A stretch of DNA of 64,000 bases from Asterias rubens (GCF_902459465.1 NC_047071.1:8928001-8992000), one strand, 5' to 3'; positions 2,279 through 44,500 are shown, numbered from the stretch's first letter. Program-made: numbers and translations. The notes: a model not told the origin generated them from the letters alone.

Positions 2279-3178
2279 AAGTCTTCTTTGTTGCTTGTGT
2301 TTCGAGCATAATGAAGTGTTTCTCCGTATACATATGAATGCTTTGAACACATGTTCTTTGACAAAATTACCAATAGTGTCATGGGTGGGGGGGTTAAACC
2401 TTTGATAATGACCAGTGTTTATAACCGGTTGTGAGCGGATACCCCGCGCTAGTCTTCGTGCAAGACGTTTCTTGTTACGGTGATGCGGACGCTGTCAGTG
2501 AGTTGGCCGCGCTGTGTGTGAAAGAAAAACCAGAACGTGTTGCACCAAGACTATGAAGCGCATGAGCACGAAAGAATCAAGAAACTGTCGGAAATAGGCA
2601 TCTCAGTCATAACAATGCAACACACGGACGTCGTACATACAGAGCTCAAACGGATTTAGTTTTACAGAGTTTCTTACTTTATTACGCCTTTTAACCACAG
2701 GCATTTATGAATGGGAATAAAATAGTAGTGATAAAGGCCCTCGCCTTCGGCTCGGAGCTTTATCACACGGCAAAAACAATGGCCCTGCCGGTTTTAAACG
2801 GTCGTGAAAGAACTCATGGACACCCCTTTATTCCCTTATTATAACAATTTTACCGTGGACGAGATGACAGACTTTTTGTAAACAAAATTGTAATAAAAAA
2901 TATAAAAACCCAGCCAGAAGACAATTTGACCAATTCTCCAGGATTTTAGATTCATGGTTTTACTTTTGCTTTTAGTTACGATAACGTTACCCTCCTCCCT
3001 AGGGCCTAGTTGAGATAACACAATCTGACGGCGGAGCCGCAGGCGCCGTCGGCAGGAGGGTTACAATACATTATCGCAACTACATGTACCTCCTCTCGAC
3101 CTCCGGCTCCACCATCTGGAGGAGTGTTATGTTATCGCAACTATTTTGCTTTTATTGGAACATTATGTCTTTTAAATT

Positions 3179-3310
3179 GGATAACTTTCCGTATGGCGCC
3201 ACCACTTTTTCACTCATTTTTACAAAAAGGGATATCTCATTGAGGTAAATAAGTTACTATATTATTTCATATCGAATGAAAAAGTGGTGGCGCCATACGG
3301 AAAGTTATCC
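3179..3310. mobile_element. 132-bp MITE, family GGATAACTTTCCGTATGGCGCCACC (copy 1)
   Basis: About 35-bp TIRs; near-identical copies at 16183-16314 and 16863-16994. Confidence 0.85.
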
Positions 3311-3906
3311 ATGCTGGAATAGTGTTGTTTACGTATCACGAGAGTTTCATTGTGTTGTCAATCCTCAAGTCAACACACTGTGACTCTCTGTGTATTTTTT
3401 GGCCGCCGTACATGCACACGTTGTAATAATAGGCACAACGTATTGGTTGTATGCTGCAGCTGCACCAAACGAGCACACAGCGGCAAATTTTAATGAACAC
3501 ATTTTGATGAATTATGTGCTTGGGAAACCAATGAAGAATTCGTGTCTGAAATGGAACTTACCCAGACTCTAAGAATACACTGAAGTGGAAATTCACAGGC
3601 ATCTAAAATTCGGGTTTAGTTTGTTTCGAATAGTCCCGCCAGACAGCTAACCGTACACACATTGCCGAAAAGCAATACACAACAAACAACTAGCTCGCGC
3701 GCCGACGTTTGTTGATGACATGCAGCAGGCGGCCGGCCCGGCGCCCCCCGCGACTCCGTGCTCGCCGTGTGTACGTTCAAGCTGGGCTGGCCATTCGTAA
3801 ATGGAAAAAAAAGTCACAAGCCGGTCAACTTGAGGCCGCGCCGGTCAACTTGAGGCCGCATCGGTCAAACGGCATTAAATGGTGCCTGGGGAATAGAAGG
3901 ACCCTG

Positions 3907-4055
3907 GGGTGGATTTCACAAAGAGTTAGGACTAGTCTTATCTCGAGTTAGGACCAGTTGCTCGTCCTAACTTAGGACTATCCATGCAATTTGTATATCT
4001 CCTATAGGACCAGTCCTAAGTTAGGTCTAGTCCTAACTCTTTGTGAAATCGACCA
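3907..4055. mobile_element. Harbinger-like MITE with CTG TSD
   Basis: TIR GATTTCACAAAGAGTTAGGACTAG/CTAGTCCTAACTCTTTGTGAAATC, with CTG on both flanks. Related copies at about 25055-25215 and 53163-53328. Confidence 0.65.
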
Positions 4056-4151
4056 CTGGTGAAAAACAATTTAGAAACAGACTTGCTCTAGCTGGTATCT
4101 ATAGTTGTTTTACTCACTACTTTTTTGCTCTGGTGATTGAGGCTGGATTGT

Positions 4152-4440
4152 GGGGGGTCTCGTATGGCCAAGGTGAGCTGCACCGAACTTTCACAAGCTC
4201 TGTGTAATCATGGAGGTAACCCTATCTCTCTCATCGATGCAGAGTGTGGGCTCGAGTCCCACTCGAGACACTGTGTTCTTTTAAACCATTGTTTTGTCAT
4301 TCGGGTGGGACGTAGGTATTGGTCCCGTTTGTTGTTATGAAAACGGTTGTTATCGACGTGTAAACAAACCCATTTAAATCGCAAAACTTGAAGGGGCTCG
4401 CCGCCCGCTGTGCCGGGTTTCTCACTGGCAGGCAGAGCTT
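4152..4440 (+). mobile_element. Degenerate tRNA-derived SINE
   Basis: B-box-like GGGCTCGAGTCCC; body similar to the SINEs at 29635 and 40908. Confidence 0.55.
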
Positions 4441-4463
4441 CTTCCTTCCTGATCCTCCAATGC

Positions 4464-5140
4464 AAAAGGGTACACGTTTGGTAATTGACGAGCATTGGAG
4501 AGATGTTGATAGTATAAAACATTGTGAGAAACGGCTCCCTCTGATATTTGAGAAAGAGGTAATTTCTCAAAAAATAATAATAAAATACTTCTAGCCAGAA
4601 GTCTGTATTCATAGGCACACAAATTCGTCAAACAAGATGTTTTTTCTCTCATCATTTTCTCGCAACTTCGATGACCAATTATTTAGCTCAAAATTGTTAT
4701 GCTTATGCATGTTGGGATACACCAAGTGACAGACTGGTCTTTGACAACCATTGTACAGGCTTCCCTTTATAATCACAGTGAAGGCTGCACTGGCTCTAAG
4801 GAAGAAGAACGTTGTTCACCATCTTCTTTACTATAAAGTTTTGTCTTTCTCCCGAACTTTTATTTAGTATGTATTCATCTTTAAAGGGAAGTTTATTGGA
4901 AGTTACTCAAAATGAATATACCTTAAAAACTGACGTGGTATATAACGGGCATTGGAGATTGTAGCGGCTCCCTCTGAAGTAGCATTTAAATAAAAGAGGT
5001 TATTTCACTACAATAACTAGCCAGAAGTCTTTTATTCCTATCTGAGAGCACACGAATTCGTCCAACAATAAGGGTGTTTTTTGTCTCATCATTTAATTTC
5101 TCGCAACTTCAATGACCAATTTAGCTCAAATTTTCACAGG
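4464..5140. mobile_element. Two partial Kolobok-type MITEs (AGGGAAGGTACACG subfamily)
   Basis: Family-diagnostic internal motifs GAGAAACGGCTCCCTCTGA and CGCAACTTCGATGACCAAT, at about 4464-4770 and 4880-5140. Another partial copy lies at about 775-1075. Confidence 0.75.
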
Positions 5141-5485
5141 AAAAGTTTTTTGGTAAGTTCTGGCTAGTTATTTTAGTGAATAATAACCTTTTTTTCGTGG
5201 GGGGCTGGAGAGCCGCCTACGGACAGATTTCCCTGAGACACCGTCGCTTCTTTGGGGAACAAAAAGTAAAAAAACAAAAATAATAATAATAATTGTTTTG
5301 TTGTTGCTGCTGCAGCTGATGTTGTTTATGTTTTTGTTAAAGACTACGGGACCTATTCGCGAATAGGTATTAGTCTTACTTGGGCAACAACTCGAAAGCG
5401 CTCGAGCGCGCAAGCCCGCCCCCTTTTGATATCCACATAAAAACGCCATTGTCATCACACTTTTCATTCATCGTTTGTTTTCATA

Positions 5486-6694
5486 ATGCACAGGGCACGG
5501 GCTGTCGATATTGTTAAAGCTGGCGGATTACTCGTTTTCCGTCGATGTCAACAAAAAATTGAGTATCTGATGCTGAAAAAGCCTAGACATAAGTTACACT
5601 GGTCGCCACCAAAAGGTTTGTTCGTAACTATCTTATGTTTACATAGCTTGCTGCTGCGCAGGAAAGTAGCAAGTTTGTCTTGCCCATTTTCCGGACAGTT
5701 TAACAATTCACAGTGTGTGCCGAGTCCCTAGTTTTAACCCATTATATTTCGTCCCAACCAAGGCTGCTCACCCGTGACCCTGAGCTAACAAATTGTGTAC
5801 TGTTGTTTGTATTTTCAATTTCTGTTTATTTGTGTCATGTTTGTCAACAATACAAACTGTAATTTTGTAATATTAAAATTTATAAAAAGAACCAACTTAT
5901 TTTAAAAACTAAACTTAATTAACTTAGGCCTATAACTTTATGCCAATCCTGATTGATTGCTTAGATTGTCCTTCATTCATGGGCTACCTTAGTTTACTTA
6001 AAGACCCAGCTGGGGCGCTGTACTACCTTTTTTCCCCCAAAAGTTTGTCATAATCGGTCGAACTTAACTCCATTTGTTTTTTTAAAGAAAGGAGACAGTA
6101 GCACAGTACCTAACTTTGCGTTTTGAGTTTACCGCTCAGTGAGCATTTCATTTTTATTTTGGCATCAATGCAATGCAACATTTTTAATTGATTGTTCACT
6201 ATTCTCTTGTGACCCAGATGGCCGATCAACAGGAAGTCCAGACTCTGTGGCTCTTTTGTAAACTAAATGTACATCGTCTATACATGTACGTAGCAATTGG
6301 AATATCAATTAATTTCAGTTGTGAACCTTCCCTTTAACCCACAGGTCACGTAGATGCAGGGGAAACCAACTATGACGCAGCCATTAGAGAAACATTTGAG
6401 GAAGCAGCCCTCCGAGAAGAACATCTCAGCATATACAAAGATAAATGCTGGACACTCACTTACCTGACAAAGGGAAACAGAACTAAAGAGGTTGTCTATT
6501 GGCTGGCTCAGCTGAGAGACTGGAATACACCCATTAAATTGTCCAATGAGCACGATGGTTACAAGTGGGTTGTAATCTCTGACGCCCTGGAGATGTCCGA
6601 CAGGGCCAACTGGCCAGAAATGAGGAGGATGCTACTTGAAGCTGAGGAACACCTGCGATTGAACATGGCTGATGGATCTACGACCTCTACATAA
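5486..6694 (+). CDS. NUDT2: Bis(5'-nucleosyl)-tetraphosphatase (asymmetrical Ap4A hydrolase), Nudix family
   Basis: Two coding exons, 5486-5615 and 6345-6694, joined by a phase-1 GT-AG intron; 159 aa. The sequence AGGLLVFRR...HWSPPKG|HVDAGETNYDAAIRETFEEAAL (Nudix box)...VVYWLAQL...LSNEHDGYKW is collinear with remembered NUDT2. Confidence 0.9.
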
Positions 6695-7789
6695 TTATTC
6701 AATGTTATCTCCATTTAGGTTGTTTCCATTCTTAATTTGTTTGTTTTTTAGTGTGTGATTCTTAATGAAGTATTTTAACTAGGTCAGCTTTGTAAGTCAA
6801 TAATAGTACTTCCTTCTGTGTTATGATTGTGCATGGTGTTTTATTTTTTGAAATGTTGCATATGAAGTGAAACAATTTGCCAGTTTTTTTAAATGTAAAT
6901 TTATTGATTTTATTTAAGAACTACTTTTTAACGATGCAGTGCAATTGTAAATTTGAGTTTAACTGTAATTATTTGATACTTTGTGTTTTAACCGAACTTC
7001 ATGAATAACCAATTGATGTAACAATATATTGAAATACAAGTTTTGGAGACAAAAGGGTTTCTTAGATCGTATGCAAAAACTAATTGTAAAGCAATTTTTA
7101 TAAACCTAATTCATACTTGTCGTGTTCAACCATTTGAAACCATTCACCTTGCACACTATGTACAGGGCACACAACTACAGACTCAAATTACAGTTCACCA
7201 TGAATGAAATTATAGTTCACCATGGGTGCAATTATAGTTCACTAAATCAACCAGGGTGTACCAACATGTAACAAAGTAGCACGCAAACTCTTTGATATCA
7301 GGGTATTGTCAAGGTTGTGTGCTTAGCAGAGAATACTGCTCAGTCCTCACCACATGCACTGTATGCATTTGCTTAGCAAACATGGCAAGGAGAGTTGCCA
7401 CAAGCTTTCAAATGGGCATACATGTTTTCCCTCATGATGTACTGTATGCACATGATGTATTTAGCATTTTTGTCTTAAAATGTGGTTATAACTTCATCTT
7501 TTAGGATTTTTAGTTTATTTTTTAGTGATAATTGTAATAAACACCCTCTTAAGTAAACATGTAGGGCCTACCTAAGTAAATAAATGTGTGGTCGAAAATG
7601 GCAGGTTCATACATGTACTGTAATATAGATTTTTAATCGGAATTATCAACGTTCTGAGATTTTGTTTCGCCTGGGTGGGTTCAAAATCAAAATAGAAAAA
7701 GTAAAAAGTTTCAAACAAAATTCAAAAACACCAAATAAACAAATGAAATGGCACAAAATAGAAATCTTAAGTTCAGGTTTGCATTTTTA

Positions 7790-8095
7790 GTTCATGAGTA
7801 CAAAACAACACGAAACCTGCGATCTTCACATAAATCCCTGCCGACTCCCCCAGTTATCAAAACCAAGTCGTACGGTACCCGCTCTTTCCAATATGCATCA
7901 GTTCAGTTATGGAACAGTCTTCCAAGAGGTTGTCAAACACTTAACAGATTGAGACATCAGAACAATTCAAAATCCGGTTATAAACATATCTGTTTACTTT
8001 GTACAATAGTTGTTGATTTCCTTTTACAGCGCATCTATAGGGACCTCATGGTGATACGCGCTATATAGAATGGTTTTATTATTGTATTATTAATA
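7790..8095 (+). mobile_element. 3' end of a 5'-truncated L2/CR1-group LINE
   Basis: HEYKTTRNLRSSHK...KSYGTRSFQYASVQLWNSLP is the typical RT C-terminal motif. It is followed by GATACGCGCTATATAG and a (TAT)n-like tail. Confidence 0.8.
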
Positions 8096-9649
8096 TTAGT
8101 AGCCCCGGTATGGCATCAGTCACTGAAAAAGAGGCACACATAGAGAAGTCTATTTCTACCTCCATGGTAATAGAGTGTAACATGGACTGACCCATATATT
8201 TATAACCACTTTTGAACCCCAAACTACCCTAAATAAGTATTGATTAAATGTTAATAAAATTGAGCTCTTGCCTAAGTGTTTTATGCAGAAATTCTCTCTC
8301 AGTGTCAGTGTTGAGGTTTATAGAGTACAACTATGTGTATACTTCAATGAATGTAGCCAATCAATTATTATGCAAAATAACTACTTGTCTTGAAGATATC
8401 TATGTATTTTAAATAGCAAGTATAATGTTTGTCAGTGAATTTTTAGAGCTGCTACATGTTACTAAACTCATGACAAAACATCTTTTAGACTTTGAATATA
8501 GCGTACATAAACATGTATTGTCCAACTTCTTGTTTAATACGGCAAGTCCTTTTTCATTGTTATGTTGTACAATAACAGGAAAACAAGGAAAAGGGGGAAA
8601 CAAGAACTTAAAAGAACCTCCTTTTCTTGTGAGGATATGCAGGCCTGGAATTTCATCTTTGAGAGGGCAAGGGCATTTTCATTTTGCATTTCTTATTATG
8701 GTCTACATGTACATGTATTGTAGGGGGGGGGGGGGAGTGTCCTAAACTTTTGAAGGGCCACCAAGGTCAAGACCAAGGCAACAGAGGTCATATGTAGCTT
8801 TCATGTAACTCCATGTCTGGATTAAAAAAAAGTGTAAAATAATCTGCTGAAAAAGCAGCTAACCTCGTGAATTCAGGACTTTTGGCCACTTTGGGAGAAT
8901 GACTAGTACAACATGTACAATGCACATGTACATTGTATGTTAAAGCAATCGCACACCATCGGGAAACAGTATTGTCCAACATGTCCAAAGGCCCACACTT
9001 CGTGTATCAAAACTTATATATTTCGCTGTGTCATGACATTGTTTAAAATAAATCCGTTATTCTCCATATCTAGAATTGATAACTGTTTTAATGTTTTCTC
9101 AAAAAGTTATGCATTTAATGGAATAATATTTCAAGGGAGGTCTTTCACCATTACCTTCTGTAAACCCTGTAAGTTATTTGTAAATCTGTGAACTTTTAAC
9201 TTTTGTTCTGTTCAGAAAGTGTCCAATGGCTTTAAATGCTGCACTTAGTTTATAACTGCTATAACATGTATAATGGCCTTTATATTGATACCCACCTTAG
9301 GCACACTGTAGTGTATATTACATTTACAGGTTGTGTTTCATTATTGTATTCTTCCAAAATAAAAATGTAGATCAAATGTAGATCATCTGATGTTAATATT
9401 TCCTCACCTTTGTACAATATTTGTTAGTAAGTTAAATAAATACTGTGTCCATGACAAAATGTAGACAATTATTAGTTGTGTCAATATTTAGGACTCTCCA
9501 AACGCTACTTCTATTTTTTATTTCATTTTAAACAAATCTCAATGTTACTTTTGGCTCATAATCTACTCATTTGTACCATCGAGGTACATGTAGGAGTAAG
9601 CATGTTAAACGGGGTTCTCTCTATGGCTGTACAGTCTGCAGTCTGTGTA

Positions 9650-9987
9650 AAACCTCACTTGGTAACCAGTAATGGGGAGAGGTTGATAGTATAAAAACAT
9701 TGTGAGAAACGGCTCCCTCTGAAGTGACATAGTTTTCGAGAAAGAAGTAGTTTTCCACGAATTTGAATTCGAGACCTCAGATTTAGAATTTGAGGTCTCG
9801 AAACCAAGCATCTGAAAACACACAATTTCGTGTGACACAGGGTTTTTCTTCTTTCATTATTATCTCGCAACTTCGACGACCAATTGATCTCAAATTTTCA
9901 CAGGTTTGTTATTTAATGTATATGTTGAGAAACACCAAGTGAGACGACTGTTCTTTGACAATTACCAATAGTGTCCAGTGTCTTGAA
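9650..9987 (+). mobile_element. Kolobok-type MITE, left end missing
   Basis: Family internal sequence and right TIR CAATTACCAATAGTGTCCAGTGTCT. Confidence 0.85.
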
Positions 9988-11071
9988 GCAGAAAATACTG
10001 CAAATGAGTAGGATTTATTTTGGCAAGCAAAATTGTGTTTGTGCTCGGCTTCTTTTTGTGCTTTGAAGAAAACATTGCACCTATATGACATTGAGGGCCC
10101 GGTAACAACATGACCAGAGGAGACAAATAAGGAATGCTTTGTCTTCTATTCAGAATTATCAACAGATTTGAACTTTAATGTGTTTCTCATCAAATTTCAT
10201 CACTAGAATATAAACAATTTGTGTTGAAATAGCTCGTCAATATTTGTACAATTGGGGTGGGTGATGGCTGAGTAAAAAAAACAATTTTGACAACAATGTT
10301 TAACTTGAAATTGTTTAATTTGTTTTTATGTAAAAGAAACCATAAAATTCTTCAGTTTGTACATGTCGTTGGAATCATAAATTTATTCACAGGAAAAATA
10401 AATATAAGGATTACCACAGATGATTCTGATGAAACATTGACAATCAAACAAAAGTTAAGTAAAAATGCCTCCATTGTTTCAACTTTCCTTTTAAATCTGT
10501 TGCTGTGAAACAGCGCAACGATAAAGGCTGGCCTGAATTTAATGGCAGTGCTCACGAACAGCGAAAACGTTAACAGATGTTATTACAAGATACTGCTGAA
10601 GGTCAAACAAAGGCTAGACCTGTGGACAAATCGTTAAAATGTCACGGTGATAGCGTTCCGACTAATTCCAAATCTCATCGCGATTCCCGCGGTATTGTTG
10701 CGAGACTGCTGGCTCCTCGAGACTACTGCTTTCACGACTACAGTTCCAATGGGGATTAGAAGTCGGCAACCAGCAGTTCGCAGGAGAGCAGTGATCTCAC
10801 CAGGCACCGCCACAACTCGACTTTCTCACCGCGGCAGACCATAAACAACTTGTCCAAAAGTCTAAATGAAGACCTACATGTATTATTGGCTGATAGGTAC
10901 ATAGATGTGAAGACGTAGATCATTGGCTCTATGGTACATTCTTTTAATTTTGTTTACAATTTTTACAAAGTTTTTGCATCTGCATTCTTGTATAACAAAA
11001 AGGTTTCTTAACAAAATACAGTGCAGATGCTAAGCACTTATTCTGCAAGGATAAACAGTGGTTGCAACCCA

Positions 11072-11217
11072 GGCCCAAATCGTAAAGCATGTCAGCATCA
11101 ACTTGCTAAGCACATTGCTTAGCAGAAATTAGTCACCAGCCAAAATATCATACAGTTTACATGCTGTGACTGGTACCCCACACGATTATCTGCTTAACAG
11201 CTTTACAAAATTGGGCC
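11072..11217. mobile_element. Harbinger-like MITE (GGCCCAA family, short variant)
   Basis: GGCCCAAAT...AATTGGGCC termini with CAG/CTG flanks. Confidence 0.6.
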
Positions 11218-11329
11218 CTGGTGTGGCAGGACTATCATAGAGGTCCTTTCTCTATGGTATTTTGTAGCACCAAATTACCATTCACAATAAAGATACTGTG
11301 TTAAATCAGTCAATAGCCACACAGGTCTG

Positions 11330-11566
11330 GGCCCAATTTCATAGAGCTGCTAAGCACACAAATTTGCTTAGCATGAAATTTCTTCCCTGATAAAAACAGG
11401 ATTACCAACCAAATTTACATTTGCTGCATATTGCTTGTTACTTGTATTCAGCTGTTGTTTGCTTATCCTTAAAATCCGAGGAATTGGTTGGTAATCCTGT
11501 TTTTATCAAGGAAGAAATTTCATGCTAAGCAAAATGTTGTGCTTAGCAGCTCTATGAAATTGGGCC
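11330..11566. mobile_element. Harbinger-like MITE (GGCCCAATTTCATAGAGCTGCTAAGCAC family)
   Basis: About 28-bp TIRs; CTG duplicated at 11327-11329 and 11567-11569. Other copies at 50599-50837, 60165-60405 and about 48957-49222. Confidence 0.85.
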
Positions 11567-12078
11567 CTGCTGGTAAGTGTTACTGACGATGTAAACTGAT
11601 ACCTTGACTCATTGTTTACTTCATGTTTTATCATCCAGTACTCTTGAGTCATCAACGAGTGCGGTTGCCAAATTCTAGAAGGGAAAAGAAAACAATCCAA
11701 CAAATTAATGTCTTGGATAAAGGTTATTATTGAACATTCATTGAATTGAATCCCTGCTTTTTCCAGGAATGTGAAACTTCAGACTTCAATCTAAAGTCAG
11801 GTTTGTTTGTATACTTGCCTGGTGGAACAAAATGCAATGATTTTGTTCAGCATTCACAGAACCAGAGGGGGACGAGTGACTGAGAAGTGCCCCCCCCCCC
11901 CAAAAGAAAAAAAAACAAAAAAAAAAACAGCCTGAATTATAGCCTCCATCGAGATAAATACGTCTGAATATGCCACTACCTCTCTTCAGATAGAATTAAA
12001 CCTTGATTTACATTCAGATAATGAAGAATACTCTTCATTGGACTCTACAAAGGGGGAGAGGGGGGGGGGAGTCATTAA

Positions 12079-12364
12079 AGGCAGTGGACACTATTGGTAA
12101 TTATTCAAAATAATTATTGGCATAAAATCTTTCTTGGTGACGAGTAATGGGGAGAGGTTGATGGTTTACAACATTGGGAGAAACAGCTCCCTCTGAAGTG
12201 CCATAGTTATTTTTTGCCAAGGGTTATTTTTCTGTCATTATTATCTCGCAACTTCGATGACCGATTGAGCTCAAATTTTCACAGGTTTGTTATTTTATGC
12301 ATATGTTGAGATATACCAACTGTGAAGGCTAGTCTTTGACAATTACCAATAGTGTCCACTGCCT
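12079..12364 (+). mobile_element. Kolobok-type MITE, internally deleted
   Basis: TTAA|AGGCAGTGGACACTATTGGTAATT...AATTACCAATAGTGTCCACTGCCT|TTAA. Confidence 0.9.
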
Positions 12365-12469
12365 TTAAACGATGACACTCCACTTTTTTTATGTGTGTCC
12401 TGAAATTAGGATCCAAAGGATTTTTATCTAGGACTCTGGAAACCCTAACCATTTTTTGTGGTGACTTAA

Positions 12470-12857
12470 AGGCACAGGACACTATTGGTAGTTACTAAAA
12501 ATAGTTGTTTGCATAAAAACTGACTTGGTAACGAGTAATGGAGAGCTGTTGGTAGTATAAAACATTGTGGGAAATGGTTCCTTCTGAAGTAAGGTAGTTT
12601 TTGAAAGAAAAAAAATCTCTAAAATATTTGAACTTGATTTCAAGACCTCAGATTTAGAACTTGAGGTCTCAAAAGCAAGCATCTGAAAGCACACAAGTTG
12701 TACACCAAGGCAAGGGCATTTTTTCTTCCATTACTCTCTCACAACTTTGATGACCAATTGACAGATTTCACAGGTCCGTTTTTTTTTTTGCGTATATGCC
12801 GAGATACACCAAGTGCCGAGACTGGTCTTTGACAGTTACCAATAGTGTCCAGTGTCT
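12470..12857 (+). mobile_element. Kolobok-type MITE
   Basis: TTAA TSD at 12466-12469 and 12858-12861; AG...CT termini. Confidence 0.9.
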
Positions 12858-13688
12858 TTAACATGACTGATGCAGTGTGAGGTCATTTTGTATCTTAATT
12901 GGCACCATCAACATTATCTTTTACATACCTTTAGTTCTTCAGGTAGAGTGAATTCATCATCGCTCCAGTTTATCTGACCAATGGGGTTAGCTTTCTCCAG
13001 CTGAAGGGCACACCTGTGTAAAGCATGACTGATGTGAGTTATAAATACACATAACAGACATACATGCAGTTTCCTTCTGCTGATAACACAAGTGTCAAAA
13101 GCATTCCTGAAACCACTGTCAAACAACGGAAACATACATGCTGCACACAACTCTAAGCCAATATACATCTTCATTGACCTCAGTGTGAGGGCGCTGTTTT
13201 GGTGGGTCTTGTGACATCATATGCAATGGGTCTACTGTTTGATCCTCAGCAGTGGCAGCCTGTGTGATGAGGGGTAGCTCTAAGTTATCTATATAACATC
13301 CTTGCCAGGTTATTCCAATTTAAAAGTTTTTTTTTTCGCAGCTGTATTTTTGTACAAGAAATATAGTGCAGACACTGAGCACTTATCCTGTTAGCTATGC
13401 ATACCCACTCATATTAGCCTGAATGTGTCAGTATTACGTAGAATCAAGATGTGCCTATTCCTGAAACCAAGTCAATACCTTAGGCGTATGCAAAACCAGC
13501 AGACAAATGAGGGCACAGGTTACCAAGGCCGATACCTTCATCTTCAAATGAGGGAAACTTAAATTTGTACTGGAAGGTTTCAAGGAAAACAATTTTAACT
13601 CCTGAAGTGAACTGGTTAAGAACACCAGTGTCAGTGTTCCACCTCAACTTGATTATCGTCCCAACTATAGATTGGACCAGTCCCAAAT

Positions 13689-13828
13689 GGGACACTTTGG
13701 GACGCTAGGTGGCAGCAGACTTACCAGGTAAATGTCCATTGTTTACGTAGTTCTGAGCCTGCGCACATTACCGAAAACAATGGATTTCACCTGGTAGGTC
13801 TGCTGCCACCTAGAGTCCCAAAAGTCCC
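13689..13828. mobile_element. Palindromic MITE carrying two inverted CTCF-like motifs
   Basis: Arms of about 45 bp, GGGACACTTTGGGACGCTAGGTGGCAGCAGAC.../...GTCTGCTGCCACCTAGAGTCCCAAAAGTCCC. Confidence 0.75.
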
Positions 13829-14079
13829 TTATTAGTTTCATGCCTGTACAGCGCATTTGGATCTTGCCATAGACAGAATGCGCTTTACAAGAATTTGTTT
13901 TTATTTGATTATTAAAGTTGGGGCGACCCTTGTGCTGCAGGAGAGCCAGTACAGAAGCTCTCTCAACTAATAGGGTTGTTTTATAGTTGGGATGATTAAC
14001 AAGTTGGGACGGAAAATCCGAACGTCGGTTTTGGACCCAGACTCAGATGAGCTTGGTCACCAGACCTTGAGTTTGTAGA

Positions 14080-16531
14080 CTAGACCGCTGTAATGAAAAA
14101 TAACCTTTTGATATCTTGCTCCAGACTGCCGATCTCTTTCCTTGTGGCCTTCAGGTCCTGTACATGAATGGTCAAAACAGAAAGAATGATTTTAACAATT
14201 TCACGCTGGATGGCAATGTATTGTTCTGGCAACATAAGGCATTGTTTTATTGAAAAAACTTCAAAGGAGAATTTTTCACTGGCAGCCAGCTGGCTGATAA
14301 ATACCTTCTACGCTGGCATCTCCCAATTGAGCTTGAGGCCTCATACATATAGGTAGCCTTAATATTGGCAGTCTCCCTGTTTTGTCAATGTCTTTGTTTA
14401 AAGTGCCAGTCAGAAGTCTGTGACTGCTGTACAGCCAGGGATCACACCTAAGTTTGCAATACAGCCTGGGAAGTGGCAGCACAGGGATCACCTTATCACC
14501 TTAGGGGATGCAACTTTTTATTTTTAAATATCAAGTAATAAACCACCAGGGCAGCTGAATAGGTTATTTCTAAATAATTTTGTATTAAACAAAGAAACTT
14601 GAACTAAAAATAATAACAGTTTTTAAAAAGGTTGAGATTTGCAAAAAGGCGACACTTTCTTGGTCTGCGAGAATATCTGAACAACCTAAATATTTACCGC
14701 TTCGACTTCTGCCTCTTTGCTCTCCAAAAAACTGACGGCTTGCTCCAAGGATTGATTCTCTGTACCACTATGGTTTGGCAAACTCGCATTACCCTGGGGA
14801 AGAGATAAAACAAAAACAAATAACAAAAACAAATTTGATCGTTACCTGAGAAATTCTGCTACCTTATGAAGGGATTGTACATTCGATAATTAAAACCCAC
14901 TGGTGTTGCAACCCTATAGCAAAACAAAACTGTGAAAATTTGATTGAAAAGGTGGTAGCGTTTTTGAGATTAATTTCCGAAAATCCGGAGTGGGTGTCCA
15001 CACAGGAAGAATAATCTGCAATTAGAAAAGTGACAATCTTTGGAGATAAATTTTACTGCCCACAATTTACTGGTCCTCATTAAGCCAGCAGACTACAAAG
15101 GAACGCTGGAAGGGGTCTGGTAACTTACTATGTGTAGATTAAGATCTCGTTTATATCTTCTTTGTATATCTTTGGCAACCTTTTCTCGTAACACTCTCCT
15201 TTGCCTCTGGAAGGCTCTGTACAAAAGACGGGCATCAGGGTGATCCCTATCAAAAGTAAATGGGAACATAACTTTAAAAAGTACAATATTCCACCTCTGT
15301 TTCGTTAAGCAACTCAAATCTCCTAATGACAACAACGTAGCGTACAGTGGTGTATTTAAGCCACCTTCATGAAGGCAATTTCAATTGCTCCATACCCCTG
15401 TCTGGCCAACAAAGTGTTCCAGTAATATTTAATATCCCTCAACAAGGAAGGGTGGGGGGGGAGGGGCTTGCCCGAGGGCGCACGCCCACCAACCCCCTAC
15501 CAATTTCCAGTGCGATTGAGTTTTTTGAGGAATGATTATGGAATTTTATGAATGATATCGTCATATCAAAATGTGTCGATATTGTCCAGGATAGGGGACT
15601 AGTAGTGACTAGTGTAAGTAGTAGTAGTACTAATAGGAGTGTAGTGTCTAATAAGACTCTAGAGTCTAAGTCTAATGTATTCTAAGTGATTAATAGTATC
15701 CTAGCGTCATACGTTATCGACCCCCAACTTTGATTCCCGTTTACCGCGAGATTGTGCAAGCTGCACCGGTGACAGTAGCTATGCAATTTATTCACGGTCT
15801 GTTTTTCATCAGGCTTTAATCATGCTGAGAATAAAGTTTCCTGTCGTTGGTTATGCTCAAGTCAAAACATTTATAAAATGATTGATTTTTGGAAAAAATC
15901 ACTAAAATCATCCATACAACCTCGAAAGTTCAAAACAAAATTACTATCTATCTGCTAGATTGAGTTTCATTCTGCTTTAGTCACTGGATGGATCACGTGA
16001 GGTGGTTACTATTTGGGATTCTATGGTGTGCCAAACTGCATACTGTAATAAATTCTGATAAGCATAATAAATATGAACTTGAAGTCTACATTAAAGAGAA
16101 AATATCATAGATTGGTTTCTTATCTCCTGAAACCAAACATTACTGATCTGAAATGGGGGAAAACGGATTGTTATGAAGTGTGGGAAAAGTTTCCGTATGG
16201 CGCCACCACTTTTTCATTCGATATGAAATAATATAGTATCTAATTTACCTCAATGAGATATCCCTTTTTGTAAAAATGAGTGAAAAAGTGGTGGCGCCAT
16301 ACGGAAAGTTATCCAAGGCATTTATGGCGGAATAAATTTCCATGCGTCAACAAACCTAGCTGTGTACACTGCTGGTTAGCAGAGGTCAGAGTGATGACAA
16401 CATAACACCCATTTTAATACATACCTATACTTTGGAGGAAACAACTCTTGAAATTCAGGGAATGAATCAAATGGACCTAGTGTAACGTCGGGGTTTAACA
16501 ACATCTCGGCCAACTTCTTCACCGCCGCCAT
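14080..16531 (-). CDS. Putative Cnl2/Nkp2-family kinetochore protein; 3' end uncertain
   Basis: Four phase-consistent exons: 16531-16425, 15246-15129, 14793-14698 and 14157-14105 (or read-through to the TAG at 14082-14080). Donors are GTATGT, GTAAGT, GTAAAT; acceptors are pyrimidine-rich AG. Protein: MAAVKKLAEMLLNPDVTLGPFDSFPEFQELFPPKYRDHPDARLLYRAFQRQRRVLREKVAKDIQRRYKRDLNLHIGNASLPNHSGTENQSLEQAVSFLESKEAEVEADLKATRKEIGSLEQDIK. Confidence is higher for the gene model than for the family call. Confidence 0.75.
16183..16314. mobile_element. 132-bp MITE (copy 2), in intron 1 of the Nkp2-like gene
   Basis: TIR TTTCCGTATGGCGCCACCACTTTTTCA; same family as 3179-3310. Confidence 0.85.
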
Positions 16532-16594
16532 TTTTCATATTTTGAAATAGCGCCCTCTTTAGTTTAAATTTACAAAACACAACCTTCAGGAAAA
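16532..16594. promoter_or_regulatory. Very compact bidirectional promoter/5' region between the Nkp2-like gene and NDUFS4
   Basis: The divergent ATGs are 63 bp apart. Both sit in GAAAAATGGC, a YY1-type AANATGGC motif overlapping the start codon. Confidence 0.65.
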
Positions 16595-19500
16595 ATGGCT
16601 TCCCTCTGTCGTTTAGCCACGAAATCTTCGCATTTCAACATCTTCCAGCGATGCATTTCAACTACAGCCTTGAGGACGTTAGCTGAAGGACAACAGGAGA
16701 CACGGGTTGACATTGTTAAGGACAAAAGTGTAAGTATTGTAGTTGTAATATCGCAGTTGTAAATGTAACTCCCCTTTCTCTAAAAAAATGTTGTGGTCTA
16801 GTTTCCGGACAATGAAAACATTGAATTTTTGACTTTCAATCTGACATGACAATAAGCCGATTGGAAAAGTTTTCGAATGGCGCCACCACTTTTTCATTCG
16901 ATATGAAATAATATAGTATCTAATTTACCTCATTGATATATCCCTTTTTGGAAAAATGAGTGAAAAAGTGGTGGCGCCATACGGAAAGTTATCCAGCCGA
17001 TTCACTATACAACTGCGCGAGTCTGTCACTGCTGACAACGCAATTTGTTTATCTCCCGTGACCTTTTGACAATACCCGGGTTTATTGTCAAAAGGTCACG
17101 GGAGATAAACAAATTGCGTTGTCAGCAGTAACGGACATGCGCAGCTGCAATAGCGAATAGGCTTATTGAGGGGAAACCAGTCAACTCGCCCCTACTCATT
17201 AAGCTTCCCCCTCACCTACCAAGTTGTACCATCTCAAGTCGCCCTGAAATGTTGCCCCTTCCTTACAAAGTCTCTCACTGTATTGACACTAATGACAGAC
17301 ATTAGACTCGCCACCGGCCCGGCATGCTCGGTCAAAAAGTCACCCCCTGCCTGGACTAGCCCCATAAAATTGGTTTAATAAAACTCTAATCCATTCCGTT
17401 ACCGTATGGTGATTATATGAATGGTCGATTTATGGGGCTATCCCTGGACATGCTGGAAAAATTAGGATTGAACTAATTTATAATAATTAATCAGGTTAGT
17501 AAGTTTACTTTTCATATTTAATTTTAAAACAAATCCAAGTTTATTAACTTTTTTTTGTAATTGTTGAATTGATGATTGTTTAAATTTGTATAATTGAAAC
17601 GGGATTTACTTTTATTTGTTTAAATATCCGTTTGTATTGTAAAATGTTTGTTAGTAAAATTGTCATGGATGGTGTTGTACCGCAAACCTTATAAAAAGTT
17701 ATAGAAAGCTTTACTTTATTATCAGGGTGACGTAGACGAGATGGTTTTAACTTTATTACTTTTCTTTATTTAAATTTAATAGTCTTTAAAGGCAGTGGAC
17801 ACTATTTTTAATTGTCAAAGACTAGCCTTCACAGTTGGTGTATCTCAACATATGCATAAAATAACAAACCAGTGAAAATTTGAGCTCAATCGGTCGTCGA
17901 ACTTGAGAGATAATAATGAAAGAAAAAGCACCCTTGTCACACGAAGTTGTGTGCGTTTAGATGGTTGATTTCGAGACCTCAAGTTCTAAATCTGAGGTCT
18001 CGAAATCAAAATCGTGGAAAACTACTTCTTTCTCGAAAACTATGGCACTTCAGAGGGAGCCGTTTCTCACAATGTTTTATACCATCAACCTCTCCCCATT
18101 ACTCGTCACCAAGTAAAGTTTTATAAATGCTAATAATTATTTTGAGTAATTACCAATAGTGTCCACTGCCTTTAAATTGAAATGACTGACATTTTCATAA
18201 ATATTGTACTTAACATTGTACTTTTTAAATATTTGATTGTTAAAAAAGTGTGATACTGTCATAAATTTAAATTTCAAGCCCTACTTTAATCATCTGGTGT
18301 CTCAAATTTCAAACCTAAACAGAAAAACATAAATTATTTTACTCGTCTTGGTGATAGGATGGTCGTTACTTGTTTGTTATTTGTTTTGACAAATTTGGTG
18401 TTTTTTTTACCAACTATTTTACAAAGCTTGCAGATGGATGTTCCCCTAAAGCTCAAGCCAAAACCTTTGTGAAAGACTTTGTAAAGACGACGAAAACGAC
18501 AACAACAAATTATTTTTGTCACTTTTGTGAAAGGGCTAATGACTTTATCCCTCAGACTTTGACACAGAGCGACTTTGTTCATGTTGTTGGGATTGAATCT
18601 GTCAGGGGCAACTATGTAAAGGGCGACAATTAGCGGGGGCAGCATTGTTCAGCATTCATAAAAAAAAATGATTGAAAATGTTAACCACTGTCTTTTCTAC
18701 ATGTACGTGTTATCAATTTAGATGGACATCACCGCAGTGTCTGGCATCCCAGATGAACACATCAAGACGCGCCGTGCCCGCATCTTTGTCCCAGCCAGAA
18801 ATGCCATGCAGTCTGGCACCAACAACACCCATCAATGGAAGCTGGAGTTTGAGACGAGAGAGAGATGGGAAAATCCACTCATGGGATGGGGTTCCACGTC
18901 AGTACAATTTGTTGAACATTTCTTGATCCAATGATAGTACATGTACCTGTTGCCTGCTCATTTTGGGGTATTTTTTTCTGAACTAATGTATGTACTTGTT
19001 AGTAAAGATGATGGACAATGAGCTTTTAATACAGGGCCTTATACATGTACATGGAGTAGATCACATGGTCCATAAGGTCAAATCCAAGGTCAAAGTAGAG
19101 GTCAAAAGGTTATTAAACCTAAACATGTTCCTACAAAAAAGGTTAAAGCAGATTTGGAAAGCTTATGCACTTTCCATTTCAAAGACACCATTTTCAACCA
19201 ATTTGACCTACTTGTAATGGTTACCGATTTATGGTCGTTTGAATATCGGCAGTCAGGCGCATTTTGACAGAAGTCAACAAGAAAGAGCGAGTCGTAGCTC
19301 GAAAAACCATTTATCGGATTGAGCCGAAATTATAAATTTGAGCTTGTTGAGTCAGGATTACCCCATAACCCAAATTTAGTTGACGTTGGTAGGGTTAAAA
19401 ATTGCCAGTTTGTGGGGTGATTTGACACGGAATGACCCGTAACAAAGTGTAAAAAAAAAAAAAACGTAATTGAATTAATTCCTTGTTTTCTCCTTATCCA

Positions 19501-41500: not shown

Positions 41501-44500
41501 GTTACAGACATGAATGCTACAATCCACGGACGACGCGAATACAGATTGCAAAAACTTTTACTAAAATAATAATAATAATAAGACTTGTAGTGCGCACATA
41601 TCCACCCTGCTGGGTGTTCAAGGCGCAGTAAAAACCAAAAACAAAACAAAAACAAAACAAAAACAAAACAAAAACAAAACACAACACAAAGAAAAACAGA
41701 CACAACAAAATTAGTCATTGAAAACCTGTGACATAAGATAAGTTTTGAGAAGAGACTTGAATTTTGCAGTACAAAGACAAGATCGAAGATTAAGTGGTAG
41801 AGAGTTCCAGATGCGTGGCGCGGCTGAAGAAAAAGACCTGTCACCCCATGAGTGTCGAGACTTGGGTTCAATGAGGAGAAGCATAGAACTTGATCGAAGA
41901 TTCCTTGATGGAGTGTAAACTTGAAGCAGTTCAGAAATATAGTGGGGAGCCTTGCCATTAAGAGCTTTGTGGACAATGAGCATCAGCTTGAAGATGATTC
42001 GTTGAGAGATAGGGAGCCAGTGTAGTTGTTTCAGAATGGGGGTGATAGAACAGGATTTTCTAGACAGTGTCACAATGCGGGCAGCAGTATTTTGGAGCCG
42101 TTGAAGTCTGGAAATCTGGTTGTTAGGAAGACTGTAGAGAAGAGCATTGTCGTTGTCAAGACGAGAAGTAACAAATGCGTGAATGACCTTTTCAGTGGCA
42201 CTTTTGTCCAAGTACTTGCGAATCTTACCTATATTCCTGATGTGATATGATAATAAACGAACAATGTTGTTGATGTGTGGCTGAAGTGTCATTGATGAAT
42301 CAAAAATAACCCCTAAGATCCGAGCTTTCAGCGAGGGAGCTATCCGAGCATCACCGATGGAGATGTATGGCACTGAAACCTTAGTTAACTGTTGACGTGA
42401 CCCAAATAGAAGGAACTCTGTCTTATCATCATTTAACTTCAGGAAGTTTTGTTGTGTCCAACGTCGAATCTCTTGGATGCATTTCTCAAGTCTTGCAATA
42501 GATGCATTGGCATTTTCTTGAGAAGATTTAAACGTGATGTATAGCTGAGTGTCATCTGCGTACACATGGTAATTCAGATTAAATTTCAGGATGATGTCAC
42601 GAATCGGTAAAGTGTATAGCGTAAACCACTGCGGGCCGAGTACCGACCCCTGTGGCACAGAGTAGTTCAAAACAACAGGGTCGGATATCGCGGTGCCAAT
42701 ACATACATGCTGAGTTCTATTGTAGAGATACGATTTGCACCATGCTAGGGCTGTGTCCTCTATGCCAAGGTGATTCTGGAGCCGAGAGAGAAGGATGTTG
42801 TGATCGACAGTGTCAAAAGCAGCACTCAAGTCTAGCAGGACTAGTGCTGTAAGGTTACCATTGTCCATTGCAGAGAGAATATCGTTGCTCACACGGACTA
42901 GTGCAGCCTCGGTCCCATGGAAAGGCTTGTATGCTGACTGGAACACGTCGGACAGGTTGAAAGTATGAATGTGATCAGAAATACGTGATGAAACTACTCG
43001 TTCGATGACTTTTTCAAGATATTTTAAGTTTGCAACCGGTCTGTAGTTTTTTAATATCTCCTTGTCCAGGTTTGGTTTCTTGATGAGCGGCCTGATGTAG
43101 GAAACTTTGAGGCTATCGGGGAAACAACCGGAACTGAGGGATTCGTTTACAAGCTTAGTGATGTAGGGTACAAAAATATCGATGTTTTGCTTTATCAAGG
43201 ATGTTGACACTGGATCCAGCTCACAGGATTTTGAAGGAGATTTCATAATAAGCCTTTGAATCTCAGCAACAGTCGCAGGCTCAAACACAGATAGTCTACA
43301 CTCTGGTTGAAGTTGTGGCAATGTCTGCGGCACGTTGTAAGGGACTGATGAAAATGATGAGAGGATGTCTGAAATCTTGGTGACAAAGAATTTCTGGAAC
43401 TCATTTGCTAAGTCCTGGTCATTGTAAGTGGATGGAAGGACAGGGGTTTTGGGTTTGAGCAACAACTTACCAATTACTGTGCTGCATGTAGTGTCGTGCA
43501 ATCCGAAATGGTAACAGACTATTAATTTATCATTTTCGTACACGCAACGGACGTCTAGCAAAACTAAGACATGTCATGTGACGCGCTCTAAACCAATGAG
43601 CAGGCAGAGTACTTGTAAGGGGTGCTATAATATATAATACCTTGAGCTAAAAGCCCTGTGGTCTTGTAAAGTTTCTCCCCGAATTTGAGCCCTGATTTCT
43701 TTCACATGTCTTGATTGCATTGAATTGATATCCAAATGTGACTGTTTATGTTTACATTGTGCAGTCAAATGCTTAATCTACATGGCAACCCACGAGACTA
43801 TGCATGGGGAGAAGGTGGTCTAGACGCCATCATCACCCAGGTAAGAAATAACATTACAGACCTTTATCATGATGTCTCCATCTTGGGTCTTGTTCCTCAA
43901 ATCGAATAACAATAATGAATGCTAATACTCATTTTGCAAATAGGAACCAGACTATTTTGTTCTTCCAGCCTCGGTTTGATTACATTGGTATCAATTGGAA
44001 AAAAAAAACTGAAGATGGCTGTAACACGATAAAGGTCTATTATTATTTTGCCTCCTACTTTTCAAAAGTCTAACTCAGGGTTGAGAAATGTCAGAGTTTT
44101 ATCTGAATTCAGATTTCGGAGTTCAAAATCGGAAGACAAAAATTTGTGTATTTGTCTCCAAATGAAATAAGTCATGCTCTTTGATGTACTTCTTTAGTGT
44201 TGAAGGTATTGTTCCCAGAGGCTCCTTGAAATCTATATCTTGAGGGGTTTAAACATTTTAAAGGGAAGGTACACGTTTGGTAATTACTCAAAACAAATAT
44301 TAAAGTAAAAACTGACTTCGTAACAAGCATTGGAGAGCAGTTGATAGTATAAAACATTGTGGAAAACGACACCCTCTGAAGTAACGTAGTTTTTGAGAAA
44401 GAGGTATTTTCTCCCTAAAATAATAAAAGACTTCTAGCTAGAAGTCTTTTATTCTTTCCTGAAAGCACACAAATTCGTCTAACAAGGGTTTTTTTCTGCC

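What the first reader, a model, noticed from the sequence alone, without database searches (positions are those of the whole stretch)
14080..16531. Spliced gene encoding an apparent Cnl2/Nkp2 kinetochore subunit in an animal genome
Seen in the sequence: four phase-consistent exons that the ORF track mostly misses, encoding ...LLNPDVTLGPFDSFPEFQELFPPKYRDHPDARLLYRAFQRQRRVLREKVAKDIQ..., then a linker and a heptad coiled coil (L-L-V-T-L). From memory, the N-terminal domain of fungal Cnl2/Nkp2 (Pfam Cnl2_NKP2) has the pattern FLL.P..L...IS...F.ELFP...R.HP..R.LYR.LQ..R......V...I, followed by a C-terminal coiled coil. This aligns almost without gaps (ELFP, R.HP, LYR, Q..R, V...I). Nkp1/Nkp2 are known mainly as fungal CCAN/Ctf19-complex subunits with no recognised sequence orthologue in vertebrates, where CENP-R is the proposed positional counterpart. 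An intron-containing copy here would imply a fungal-type Nkp1-Nkp2 module in invertebrate deuterostome kinetochores that was later lost or diverged in vertebrates. Family assignment and novelty are inference.
Basis: partly seen in the sequence, partly recalled or inferred. Interest (0 to 1): 0.85.

Follow-up and report, generated by a model that had tools for sequence, protein, structure and literature searches.

The report
Starfish Nkp2/Cnl2 kinetochore-family gene
This is a real, spliced, transcribed starfish gene for a small protein of the Nkp2/Cnl2 inner-kinetochore family, but that family was already reported in non-vertebrate animals in 2019, so it is a correct call and an ordinary new member.

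Summary
The gene model needs correction and the novelty is overstated.

**Gene model.** A minus-strand gene has six GT-AG coding exons: 16531-16425, 15246-15129, 14793-14698, 14157-14105, 13013-12929 and 11674-11621. It encodes 170 aa, 167 of them identical to an Asterias amurensis protein. It over-extended exon 4 on both sides and missed two 3' exons.

**Family.**
- The near-identical orthologue scores 41.2 bits against Pfam Cnl2_NKP2 (cut-off 27); the Patiria orthologue scores 47.3.
- A starfish-only profile recovers echinoderm, hemichordate, cnidarian, nemertean, choanoflagellate, apusozoan, amoebozoan and fungal proteins, and no named vertebrate. 32 of the 33 aligned proteins hit PF09447.
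- An animal profile matches a fungal-type profile at 99.1% hhalign probability.
- The family profile matches solved yeast NKP2 end to end, but weakly (E 0.008).

**Descent.** The exon count, the intron phases and the 53-nt exon 4 are shared with a sea urchin and with Nematostella. This indicates vertical descent within animals.

**Novelty.** Plowman et al. 2019 (Table S1) already score Nkp1 and Nkp2 present in Saccoglossus and Nematostella and absent in vertebrates. Tromer et al. 2019 include both proteins in their reconstruction of the LECA kinetochore. What is new is echinoderm membership; S. purpuratus had been scored absent.

**Untested.** Kinetochore function and an Nkp1 partner in starfish.

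The parts
16425..16531 (-). Coding exon 1 (107 nt, from the ATG at 16531; ends in phase 2). Encodes the first half of the Cnl2_NKP2 head domain, including the F..LFP..Y motif.
   Evidence: Donor AG|gtatgt. 100% identical to P0002 residues 1-36.
15129..15246 (-). Coding exon 2 (118 nt). Encodes the second half of the head domain (RDHPD..LY..Q..R....V...I).
   Evidence: Acceptor ttttgatag|G and donor ATA|gtaagt. Alone it scores 24.2 bits, E 3.4e-5, against PF09447. Contigs in runs X2 and X3 match exactly this interval inside longer contigs.
14698..14793 (-). Coding exon 3 (96 nt). Encodes a low-confidence linker and the start of the coiled-coil helix.
   Evidence: Acceptor ccccag|GGT and donor GCG|gtaaat. 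tblastn to P0002 residues 71-107.
14105..14157 (-). Coding exon 4 (53 nt), the coiled-coil core.
   Evidence: Acceptor tgtacag|GAC and donor AAAAG|gttatt. 100% identical to P0002 residues 108-125. The 53-nt size is the same in Patiria, Diadema and Nematostella.
12929..13013 (-). Encodes the end of the coiled coil and a loop.
   Evidence: Acceptor ttacacag|G and donor AAG|gtatgt. tblastn to P0002 residues 116-153.
11621..11674 (-). Encodes the C-terminal helix.
   Evidence: Acceptor cccttctag|AAT. 100% identical to P0002 residues 154-170. A piece of an X4 contig ends exactly at 11674.
10826..11620 (-). Probable 3' UTR (tentative), interrupted by a high-copy repeat at about 11351-11545.
   Evidence: Contigs from X2 (10826-11356) and X4 (10951-11315, joined to 11567-11674) cover it. 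The exact end is not determined.
16532..16594 (.). A 63-nt spacer between this gene's ATG and the ATG of the divergently transcribed NDUFS4 gene. Presumed shared bidirectional promoter region.
   Evidence: The same head-to-head arrangement with a PF04800 (NDUS4) gene is seen in A. amurensis locus L001.

Best explanation
The region holds the starfish orthologue of Nkp2 (budding yeast) / Cnl2 (fission yeast), a small subunit of the inner kinetochore. The gene lies on the minus strand and has six coding exons. It encodes a 170-aa protein with an N-terminal helical head carrying the family motif, a roughly 40-residue coiled-coil helix and a short C-terminal helix. By analogy with the solved yeast Ctf19 complex, it most likely pairs with an Nkp1-type partner. 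The pair would then pack along the CENP-Q/CENP-U coiled coil to form the four-chain 'NANO' pillar of the CCAN. Shown here: the gene model, support for splicing from contigs of likely RNA runs, family membership, conservation under purifying selection, and an intron-exon structure shared across animals. Inferred: kinetochore localisation, pairing with Nkp1, and binding to CENP-Q/U.
For: - **Gene model.** Six GT-AG exons give 513 nt / 170 aa.
- **Orthologues.** 167 of 170 residues match A. amurensis P0002, and exon sizes are identical.
- **Pfam PF09447.** P0002 scores 41.2 bits and Patiria P0001 47.3 bits against a cut-off of 27. Exon 2 alone scores 24.2 bits.
- **Wider family.** A HMMER profile of the two starfish proteins against 1.84 billion representatives gives 35 hits. 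Named hits come from Ophiuroidea, Echinoidea, Hemichordata, Cnidaria, Nemertea, choanoflagellates, Thecamonas, Amoebozoa and fungi. 32 of the 33 aligned proteins hit PF09447.
- **Link to fungal proteins.** hhalign of the animal profile against the fungal-type profile gives probability 99.1%, E 1.2e-18, over 121 columns spanning head and coiled coil.
- **Link to solved structures.** The family profile matches the solved S. cerevisiae NKP2 chain collinearly (query 14-137, chain 4-129) at E 0.0078.
- **Predicted structure.** The AF2 model has pLDDT 80.5, with a helical head and a helix at residues 91-132. Its top Foldseek hit in AFDB Swiss-Prot is S. pombe Cnl2, and S. cerevisiae NKP2 is rank 4.
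- **Selection.** dN/dS is about 0.12 against A. amurensis.
- **Gene structure.** Six exons, phases 2,0,0,2,0 and a 53-nt exon 4 are shared with Diadema and Nematostella. Intron 1 lies in the same Arg codon in Nematostella.
- **Literature.** The published Nkp2 phylogenetic profile correlates best with Nkp1 (0.85) and CENP-Q (0.69).
Against: - There is no experimental evidence for any animal Nkp2-family protein at a kinetochore.
- The direct sequence match to yeast NKP2 is weak (19 bits) and sits among coiled-coil noise of similar score.
- Structural searches of the PDB gave nothing specific, and the Foldseek hit to Cnl2 is not significant on its own (E 0.12, TM 0.28).
- Transcript support comes from assembled contigs of runs whose RNA status is partly guessed, and only two of the five junctions are directly visible.
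Confidence: 0.8

Rival explanations
1. It is a true Nkp2-family protein by descent, but in animals it has been repurposed and no longer acts at the kinetochore, for example as a generic coiled-coil adaptor.
For: There are no functional data for any animal member. All animal orthologues are annotated 'uncharacterized protein'. Vertebrates manage without it. The family is patchy in animals.
Against: In the published table every species listed in the part read with Nkp2 also has CENP-Q and CENP-U, and the Nkp2 profile correlates with Nkp1 (0.85) and CENP-Q/P/U (0.64-0.69). The head motif is strongly conserved between animals and fungi.
Confidence: 0.13
2. The Pfam match is a chance or compositional hit, and the protein really belongs to another small helical kinetochore family (Mis12/Nnf1-like or CENP-R) or to an unrelated coiled-coil family.
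For: The C-terminal half gives only generic coiled-coil hits. VIA-align lists MIS12-complex chains at Z 5.6-5.9 over the full length. Tromer et al. report distant homology of Nkp1 and Nkp2 to Mis12 and Nnf1.
Against: The Pfam match lies in the non-coiled head domain and scores 14-20 bits above the curated cut-off. No Mis12, Nnf1 or CENP-R family appears even at E<=1. 32 of 33 homologues independently hit PF09447. hhalign to the fungal set gives 99.1%. The VIA Z scores are within the tool's stated noise range for helical models.
Confidence: 0.03
3. The locus is a decaying pseudogene, a contaminant, or a recent horizontal transfer from a fungus, rather than a functional animal gene.
For: The family is best known from fungi. 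The earlier survey scored a sea urchin as lacking it.
Against: The reading frame is intact with canonical splice sites. dN/dS is about 0.12 against a congener. Identity falls in step with animal phylogeny: 63% Patiria, 42% brittle star, 35% urchin, 27% hemichordates, about 22% fungi. Intron phases and exon 4 size are shared with Nematostella. The NDUFS4 neighbour is conserved in A. amurensis. Spliced contigs exist.
Confidence: 0.02

Closest known systems
S. pombe Cnl2 / S. cerevisiae Nkp2 (Pfam PF09447; solved in Ctf19c/CCAN structures such as 6NUW and 6QLE)
   Same: Same Pfam family, above the cut-off. Similar size (150-190 aa). Same order of parts: helical head with the FLL...F..LFP..YR.HP.V..LY motif, then a long coiled-coil helix. 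The profile match to the solved NKP2 chain is collinear. Cnl2 is the top Foldseek hit in Swiss-Prot models.
   Different: About 20% sequence identity. An animal gene with five introns. No functional or structural data. The Nkp1 partner was not shown in this genome.
Saccoglossus kowalevskii and Nematostella vectensis Nkp2 orthologues (Plowman et al. 2019, Table S1, PMC6823300; Tromer et al. 2019, PMC6601020)
   Same: Proteins from these two species were recovered by my starfish profile at E 1.2e-15 and 4.1e-8; I assume, but did not check, that these are the proteins the paper scored. The Nematostella gene shares the six-exon structure and intron phases with the starfish gene.
   Different: A different phylum or class. 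The 2019 survey had no asteroid and scored the one echinoderm it included (S. purpuratus) as lacking Nkp1 and Nkp2. I find orthologues in Asteroidea, Ophiuroidea and an echinoid (Diadema).
Vertebrate CENP-R
   Same: It occupies roughly the position of the Nkp1/Nkp2 helices at the head of the CENP-Q/U pillar in human CCAN (Pesenti et al. 2022 preprint).
   Different: No CENP-R family hit for the starfish-type protein even at E<=1. CENP-R contacts only the pillar head, whereas Nkp1 and Nkp2 run the whole length of the pillar. No homology is shown.
Mis12 / Nnf1 (Mis12 complex)
   Same: Reported distant homologues of Nkp1/Nkp2, with the same head-plus-coiled-coil topology (Tromer et al. 2019). Weak full-length structural alignments, Z 5.6-5.9.
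   Different: No Pfam Mis12 or Nnf1 hit. The Z scores are in the noise range. The Mis12 complex belongs to the outer kinetochore.

Membership tests
Cnl2/Nkp2 (PF09447) | Profile match to the family HMM above the curated gathering score (27 bits) | tested here: met
   P0002 scores 41.2 bits, E 1.7e-10. It differs from the window's protein only at residues 86, 98 and 142, all outside the domain. Patiria P0001 scores 47.3 bits. Window exon 2 alone scores 24.2 bits, E 3.4e-5. The spliced window protein itself could not be submitted by reference.
Cnl2/Nkp2 (PF09447) | Small protein with an N-terminal helical head followed by a long coiled-coil helix | tested here: met
   170 aa. The AF2 model (pLDDT 80.5) has helices at 2-11, 14-17, 24-28, 39-71, 91-132 and 148-167.
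Cnl2/Nkp2 (PF09447) | Detectable, collinear similarity to the experimentally defined yeast proteins | tested here: inconclusive
   The family profile A2 matches the solved S. cerevisiae NKP2 chain at E 0.0078 over query 14-137 / chain 4-129, but among coiled-coil noise of similar score. Foldseek's top Swiss-Prot hit is Cnl2 at E 0.12. hhalign to a set of six fungal-type hits (three named fungal, three unnamed) gives 99.1%.
Cnl2/Nkp2 (PF09447) | An Nkp1/Fta4-type heterodimer partner encoded in the same genome | not tested
   No Nkp1 query sequence was available by reference and the protein-database searches were exhausted. Published tables score Nkp1 present wherever animal Nkp2 is (Saccoglossus, Nematostella).
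Cnl2/Nkp2 (PF09447) | Localises to centromeres and binds the CENP-Q/U (Okp1/Ame1) coiled coil | not testable with these tools
   This needs localisation, pull-down or multimer modelling. There is only indirect support, from published phylogenetic-profile correlations with CENP-Q/P/U of 0.64-0.69.
CENP-R | Sequence match to the CENP-R family profile | tested here: not met
   No CENP-R family appears among Pfam hits for P0001 at E<=1 or for P0002 at E<=0.01.
Mis12 / Nnf1 | Sequence match to the Mis12 or Nnf1 family profiles | tested here: not met
   Neither family is among the Pfam hits at E<=1. There are only weak structural alignments, Z 5.6-5.9.

The most novel reading that the evidence does not exclude
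Echinoderms, including sea urchins that a 2019 survey scored as lacking it, keep a complete fungal-type Nkp1-Nkp2-CENP-Q-CENP-U four-chain pillar in their CCAN. If so, starfish oocytes and embryos would be the first tractable animal system for studying this module, and for asking whether vertebrate CENP-R replaced it.
Probability: 0.5. Interest if true: 0.4.

Novelty: new member of a known kind. Interest (0 to 1): 0.25.

Why it matters
The finding adds asteroids, and through the homologues found here also brittle stars, a sea urchin, a second hemichordate and a nemertean, to the animals that keep Nkp2. It also suggests that the published 'absent' call for sea urchins may reflect annotation or lineage-specific loss. 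This slightly sharpens the picture that the Nkp1-Nkp2 part of the inner kinetochore is ancestral and was lost on the chordate line. It also points to an experimentally convenient animal, starfish oocytes, for testing the module. [quoted passage not shown]

Tried and rejected
Read as the whole ORF 14080-14235. Rejected, because the only AG before that ORF's body (ccag|AA) is out of phase with exon 3. The orthologues show the true 53-nt exon.
- **Pfam on the raw 95-aa open frame around exon 2.** It scored 30.3 bits. About 6 bits came from intron-encoded residues at the polypyrimidine tract that happen to mimic the F..LFP motif. The strict exon scores 24.2 bits, so I do not cite 30.3 as evidence.
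- **Two-sequence starfish profile against PDB sequences.** Only coiled-coil noise.
- **Foldseek against the PDB.** Nothing.
- **VIA-align wide search.** Generic helical hairpins only.
- **First AF2 model from two sequences.** Mediocre, pLDDT 69. Superseded by the 33-sequence model.
- **Word-indexed protein search with the 33-sequence profile.** It returned only 4 proteins because of the candidate cap, so it gave no taxonomic survey.
- **The look-up of encoding contigs for the Saccoglossus protein.** Nothing on record.
- **Read laying joints table.** Swamped by high-copy repeats in introns 4-5 and the 3' UTR, so three of the five splice junctions are not directly documented.
- **Literature search for a paper naming an echinoderm Nkp2.** None found in the held library.

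Full report
**What is in the sequence**

The region holds a minus-strand gene. Frame analysis, splice-site inspection and tblastn with two orthologues give six coding exons. All have GT-AG introns and consistent phases.

| Exon | Window coordinates | Length (nt) |
|---|---|---|
| 1 | 16531-16425 | 107 |
| 2 | 15246-15129 | 118 |
| 3 | 14793-14698 | 96 |
| 4 | 14157-14105 | 53 |
| 5 | 13013-12929 | 85 |
| 6 (with stop) | 11674-11621 | 54 |

The spliced CDS is 513 nt and encodes 170 aa.

Its fourth exon (14080-14235) is the whole ORF around the true 53-nt exon. The upstream part of that ORF is intron, and reading through the donor to the stop at 14080 gives a false C-terminus. Two further exons were missed.

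**Transcript evidence**

Most of the output was swamped by high-copy repeats. Three pieces are still informative:
- In run X2, a 477-nt contig matches the window with no mismatch over 15128-15245 only, at contig positions 105-222. This is exon 2, flanked on both sides by sequence that is not collinear with the genome.
- A 236-nt contig in run X3 behaves the same way.
- In run X4, from a related organism with about 12% mismatches, a 1104-nt contig has a piece that ends exactly at 11674, the exon-6 acceptor. That contig also covers 10951-11315, which suggests a long 3' UTR.

The remaining junctions were not listed. The tool marks the RNA status of these three runs as a guess.

**Whose genome**

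- The protein is 167/170 identical to an 'uncharacterized protein' of Asterias amurensis (P0002) and about 63% identical to Patiria miniata LOC119746319 (P0001).
- The A. amurensis locus has identical exon sizes but different intron lengths (3955 nt against 4911 nt from start to stop). The CDS differs at 11 of 513 nt.
- The window is therefore from a close relative of A. amurensis, probably a congener.

**Family**

- Pfam Cnl2_NKP2 (PF09447, cut-off 27 bits) is hit by P0002 at 41.2 bits (E 1.7e-10) and by P0001 at 47.3 bits (E 2.1e-12).
- The three residues that differ between the window's protein and P0002 (86, 98, 142) lie outside the domain. The domain score therefore carries over to the window's protein.
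- The strict exon 2 translation alone scores 24.2 bits, E 3.4e-5.
- A 30.3-bit score from the raw open frame is inflated by intron-encoded residues and is not used.
- No other family comes close. The remaining hits are weak coiled-coil families, and no Mis12, Nnf1 or CENP-R profile appears at E<=1.

**Relatives**

A HMMER profile of the two starfish proteins, run against 1.84 billion cluster representatives, found 35 proteins at E<=1e-3. Those that carry names come from the following groups:
- **Echinoderms:** Amphiura filiformis (brittle star), Diadema setosum (sea urchin).
- **Hemichordates:** Saccoglossus kowalevskii, Ptychodera flava.
- **Cnidarians:** Actinia, Nematostella, Exaiptasia, Oculina, Paramuricea.
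- **Nemertean:** Lineus longissimus.
- **Unicellular eukaryotes:** Codosiga (choanoflagellate), Thecamonas, Pellita (amoebozoan).
- **Fungi:** Ascobolus, Dentiscutata, Funneliformis.

No named vertebrate is among them. I aligned 33 proteins, the two starfish proteins plus 31 of these hits; 32 of the 33 hit PF09447 on their own. The alignment shows the shared head motif. Identity to the starfish protein falls in step with animal phylogeny: 63, 42, 35, 27 and about 25% through the animal groups, then about 22% for fungi.

An animal-only profile (A3) matches a profile of fungal-type hits (A4: three named fungal proteins and three unnamed ones) at 99.1% hhalign probability. The E-value is 1.2e-18 over 121 columns that span the head and the coiled coil. 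One caveat applies: the fungal set was itself drawn from the hits of the starfish profile.

**Link to the experimentally defined proteins**

- The 33-sequence profile matches the solved S. cerevisiae 'Inner kinetochore subunit NKP2' chain (entries including 6NUW and 6QLE) nearly end to end, query 14-137 against chain 4-129. The match is weak, E 0.0078 and 19.4 bits, and other coiled-coil hits score similarly.
- An AlphaFold2 model built on that alignment has mean pLDDT 80.5. It shows a confident helical head (residues 1-71), a disordered linker, a long helix (91-132) and a C-terminal helix (148-167).
- Foldseek against Swiss-Prot AlphaFold models ranks S. pombe Cnl2 first (E 0.12, probability 0.60, whole length) and S. 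cerevisiae NKP2 fourth. This is suggestive but not significant.
- Foldseek against the PDB found nothing.
- VIA-align gave generic helical hairpins. MIS12-complex chains appear at Z 5.6-5.9, inside the noise range for helical models.

**A functional, vertically inherited animal gene**

- dN/dS against A. amurensis is about 0.12, from 7.5 synonymous and 3.5 non-synonymous changes. The counts are small.
- Exact spliced models of four annotated orthologues show six coding exons each, with intron phases 2,0,0,2,0 and a 53-nt exon 4. This holds for A. amurensis, Patiria, the urchin Diadema and the cnidarian Nematostella.
- Intron 1 splits the same Arg codon of the ..YR|DH.. motif in starfish and Nematostella.
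- The head-to-head NDUFS4 neighbour, 63 nt between start codons, is shared with A. amurensis.
- Together these rule out a pseudogene, contamination and recent transfer from a fungus.

**How it most likely works (inferred)**

In the yeast Ctf19 complex, Nkp1 and Nkp2 run along the Okp1/Ame1 (CENP-Q/U) coiled coil and thicken 'pillar 1'. In human CCAN, only CENP-R sits at the head of that pillar (Pesenti et al. preprint). Tromer et al. describe Nkp1-CENP-U-Nkp2-CENP-Q as a 'NANO' tetramer related to the Mis12 complex.

In the published presence/absence table, the Nkp2 profile correlates best with Nkp1 (0.85), CENP-Q (0.69), CENP-P (0.66) and CENP-U (0.64). The same table scores the one echinoderm it covers (S. 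purpuratus) and a hemichordate (Saccoglossus) as having the whole CENP-O/P/Q/U set.

The most likely role of the starfish protein is therefore as the Nkp2 chain of such a pillar. Nothing here tests localisation, the Nkp1 partner or the interface.

**Novelty**

This is already in the literature:
- Plowman et al. 2019, Table S1, score Nkp1 and Nkp2 present in Saccoglossus, Nematostella and Salpingoeca. They score both absent in vertebrates, Branchiostoma, Ciona and S. purpuratus.
- Tromer et al. 2019 add both proteins to their reconstruction of the LECA kinetochore.
- Public databases already tag the Patiria and Asterias proteins with PF09447.

The new points are modest. Asteroids, ophiuroids and at least one echinoid carry the gene, despite the earlier 'absent' call for a sea urchin. 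A nemertean also has it. I found no paper in the held library that names an echinoderm Nkp2. The finding is a correct identification of a new member of a known kind.

Noticed in passing
window 16595-16729 (+) and onward: The divergent neighbour is NDUFS4 (mitochondrial complex I subunit). Its start codon lies only 63 nt from the Nkp2 start codon, which implies a shared bidirectional promoter. Its first exon differs at one residue from the A. amurensis gene that carries PF04800. No NDUFS4 was seen within 6 kb upstream of the Patiria orthologue.
   Followed up: partly
window 16183-16315 and 16863-16995; also 17010-17147: There are two 96%-identical copies of a 133-nt element, each an internal palindrome (MITE-like). 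One lies in intron 1 of the Nkp2 gene and one just inside the NDUFS4 gene. A separate 65-nt-arm hairpin lies next to the second copy. The element is very abundant in the contigs of the laid runs.
   Followed up: partly
window 11194-11587, 11982-12966, 13558-13951: High-copy repeats sit in the 3' UTR region and in introns 4-5. Summed contig depths there are thousands to millions of times those of the flanking sequence. They swamped the splice-junction table.
   Followed up: no
window 41711-43561 (-): A 616-aa open frame with a reverse-transcriptase domain (RVT_1, 103 bits). Probably a retrotransposon copy.
   Followed up: partly
window 15249-15278 (-), the 3' end of intron 1: The polypyrimidine tract translates in frame to a peptide (FKVMFPFTF) that mimics the F..LFP..Y motif at the end of exon 1. 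It adds about 6 bits to a naive Pfam scan of the open frame. This is most likely chance. A relic of intron gain by duplication was not examined.
   Followed up: partly
L004 (Diadema setosum) 3001-9710: A sea urchin has a six-exon Nkp2-family gene, although a 2019 survey scored Strongylocentrotus purpuratus as lacking Nkp1 and Nkp2. It is open whether S. purpuratus truly lacks the gene.
   Followed up: partly
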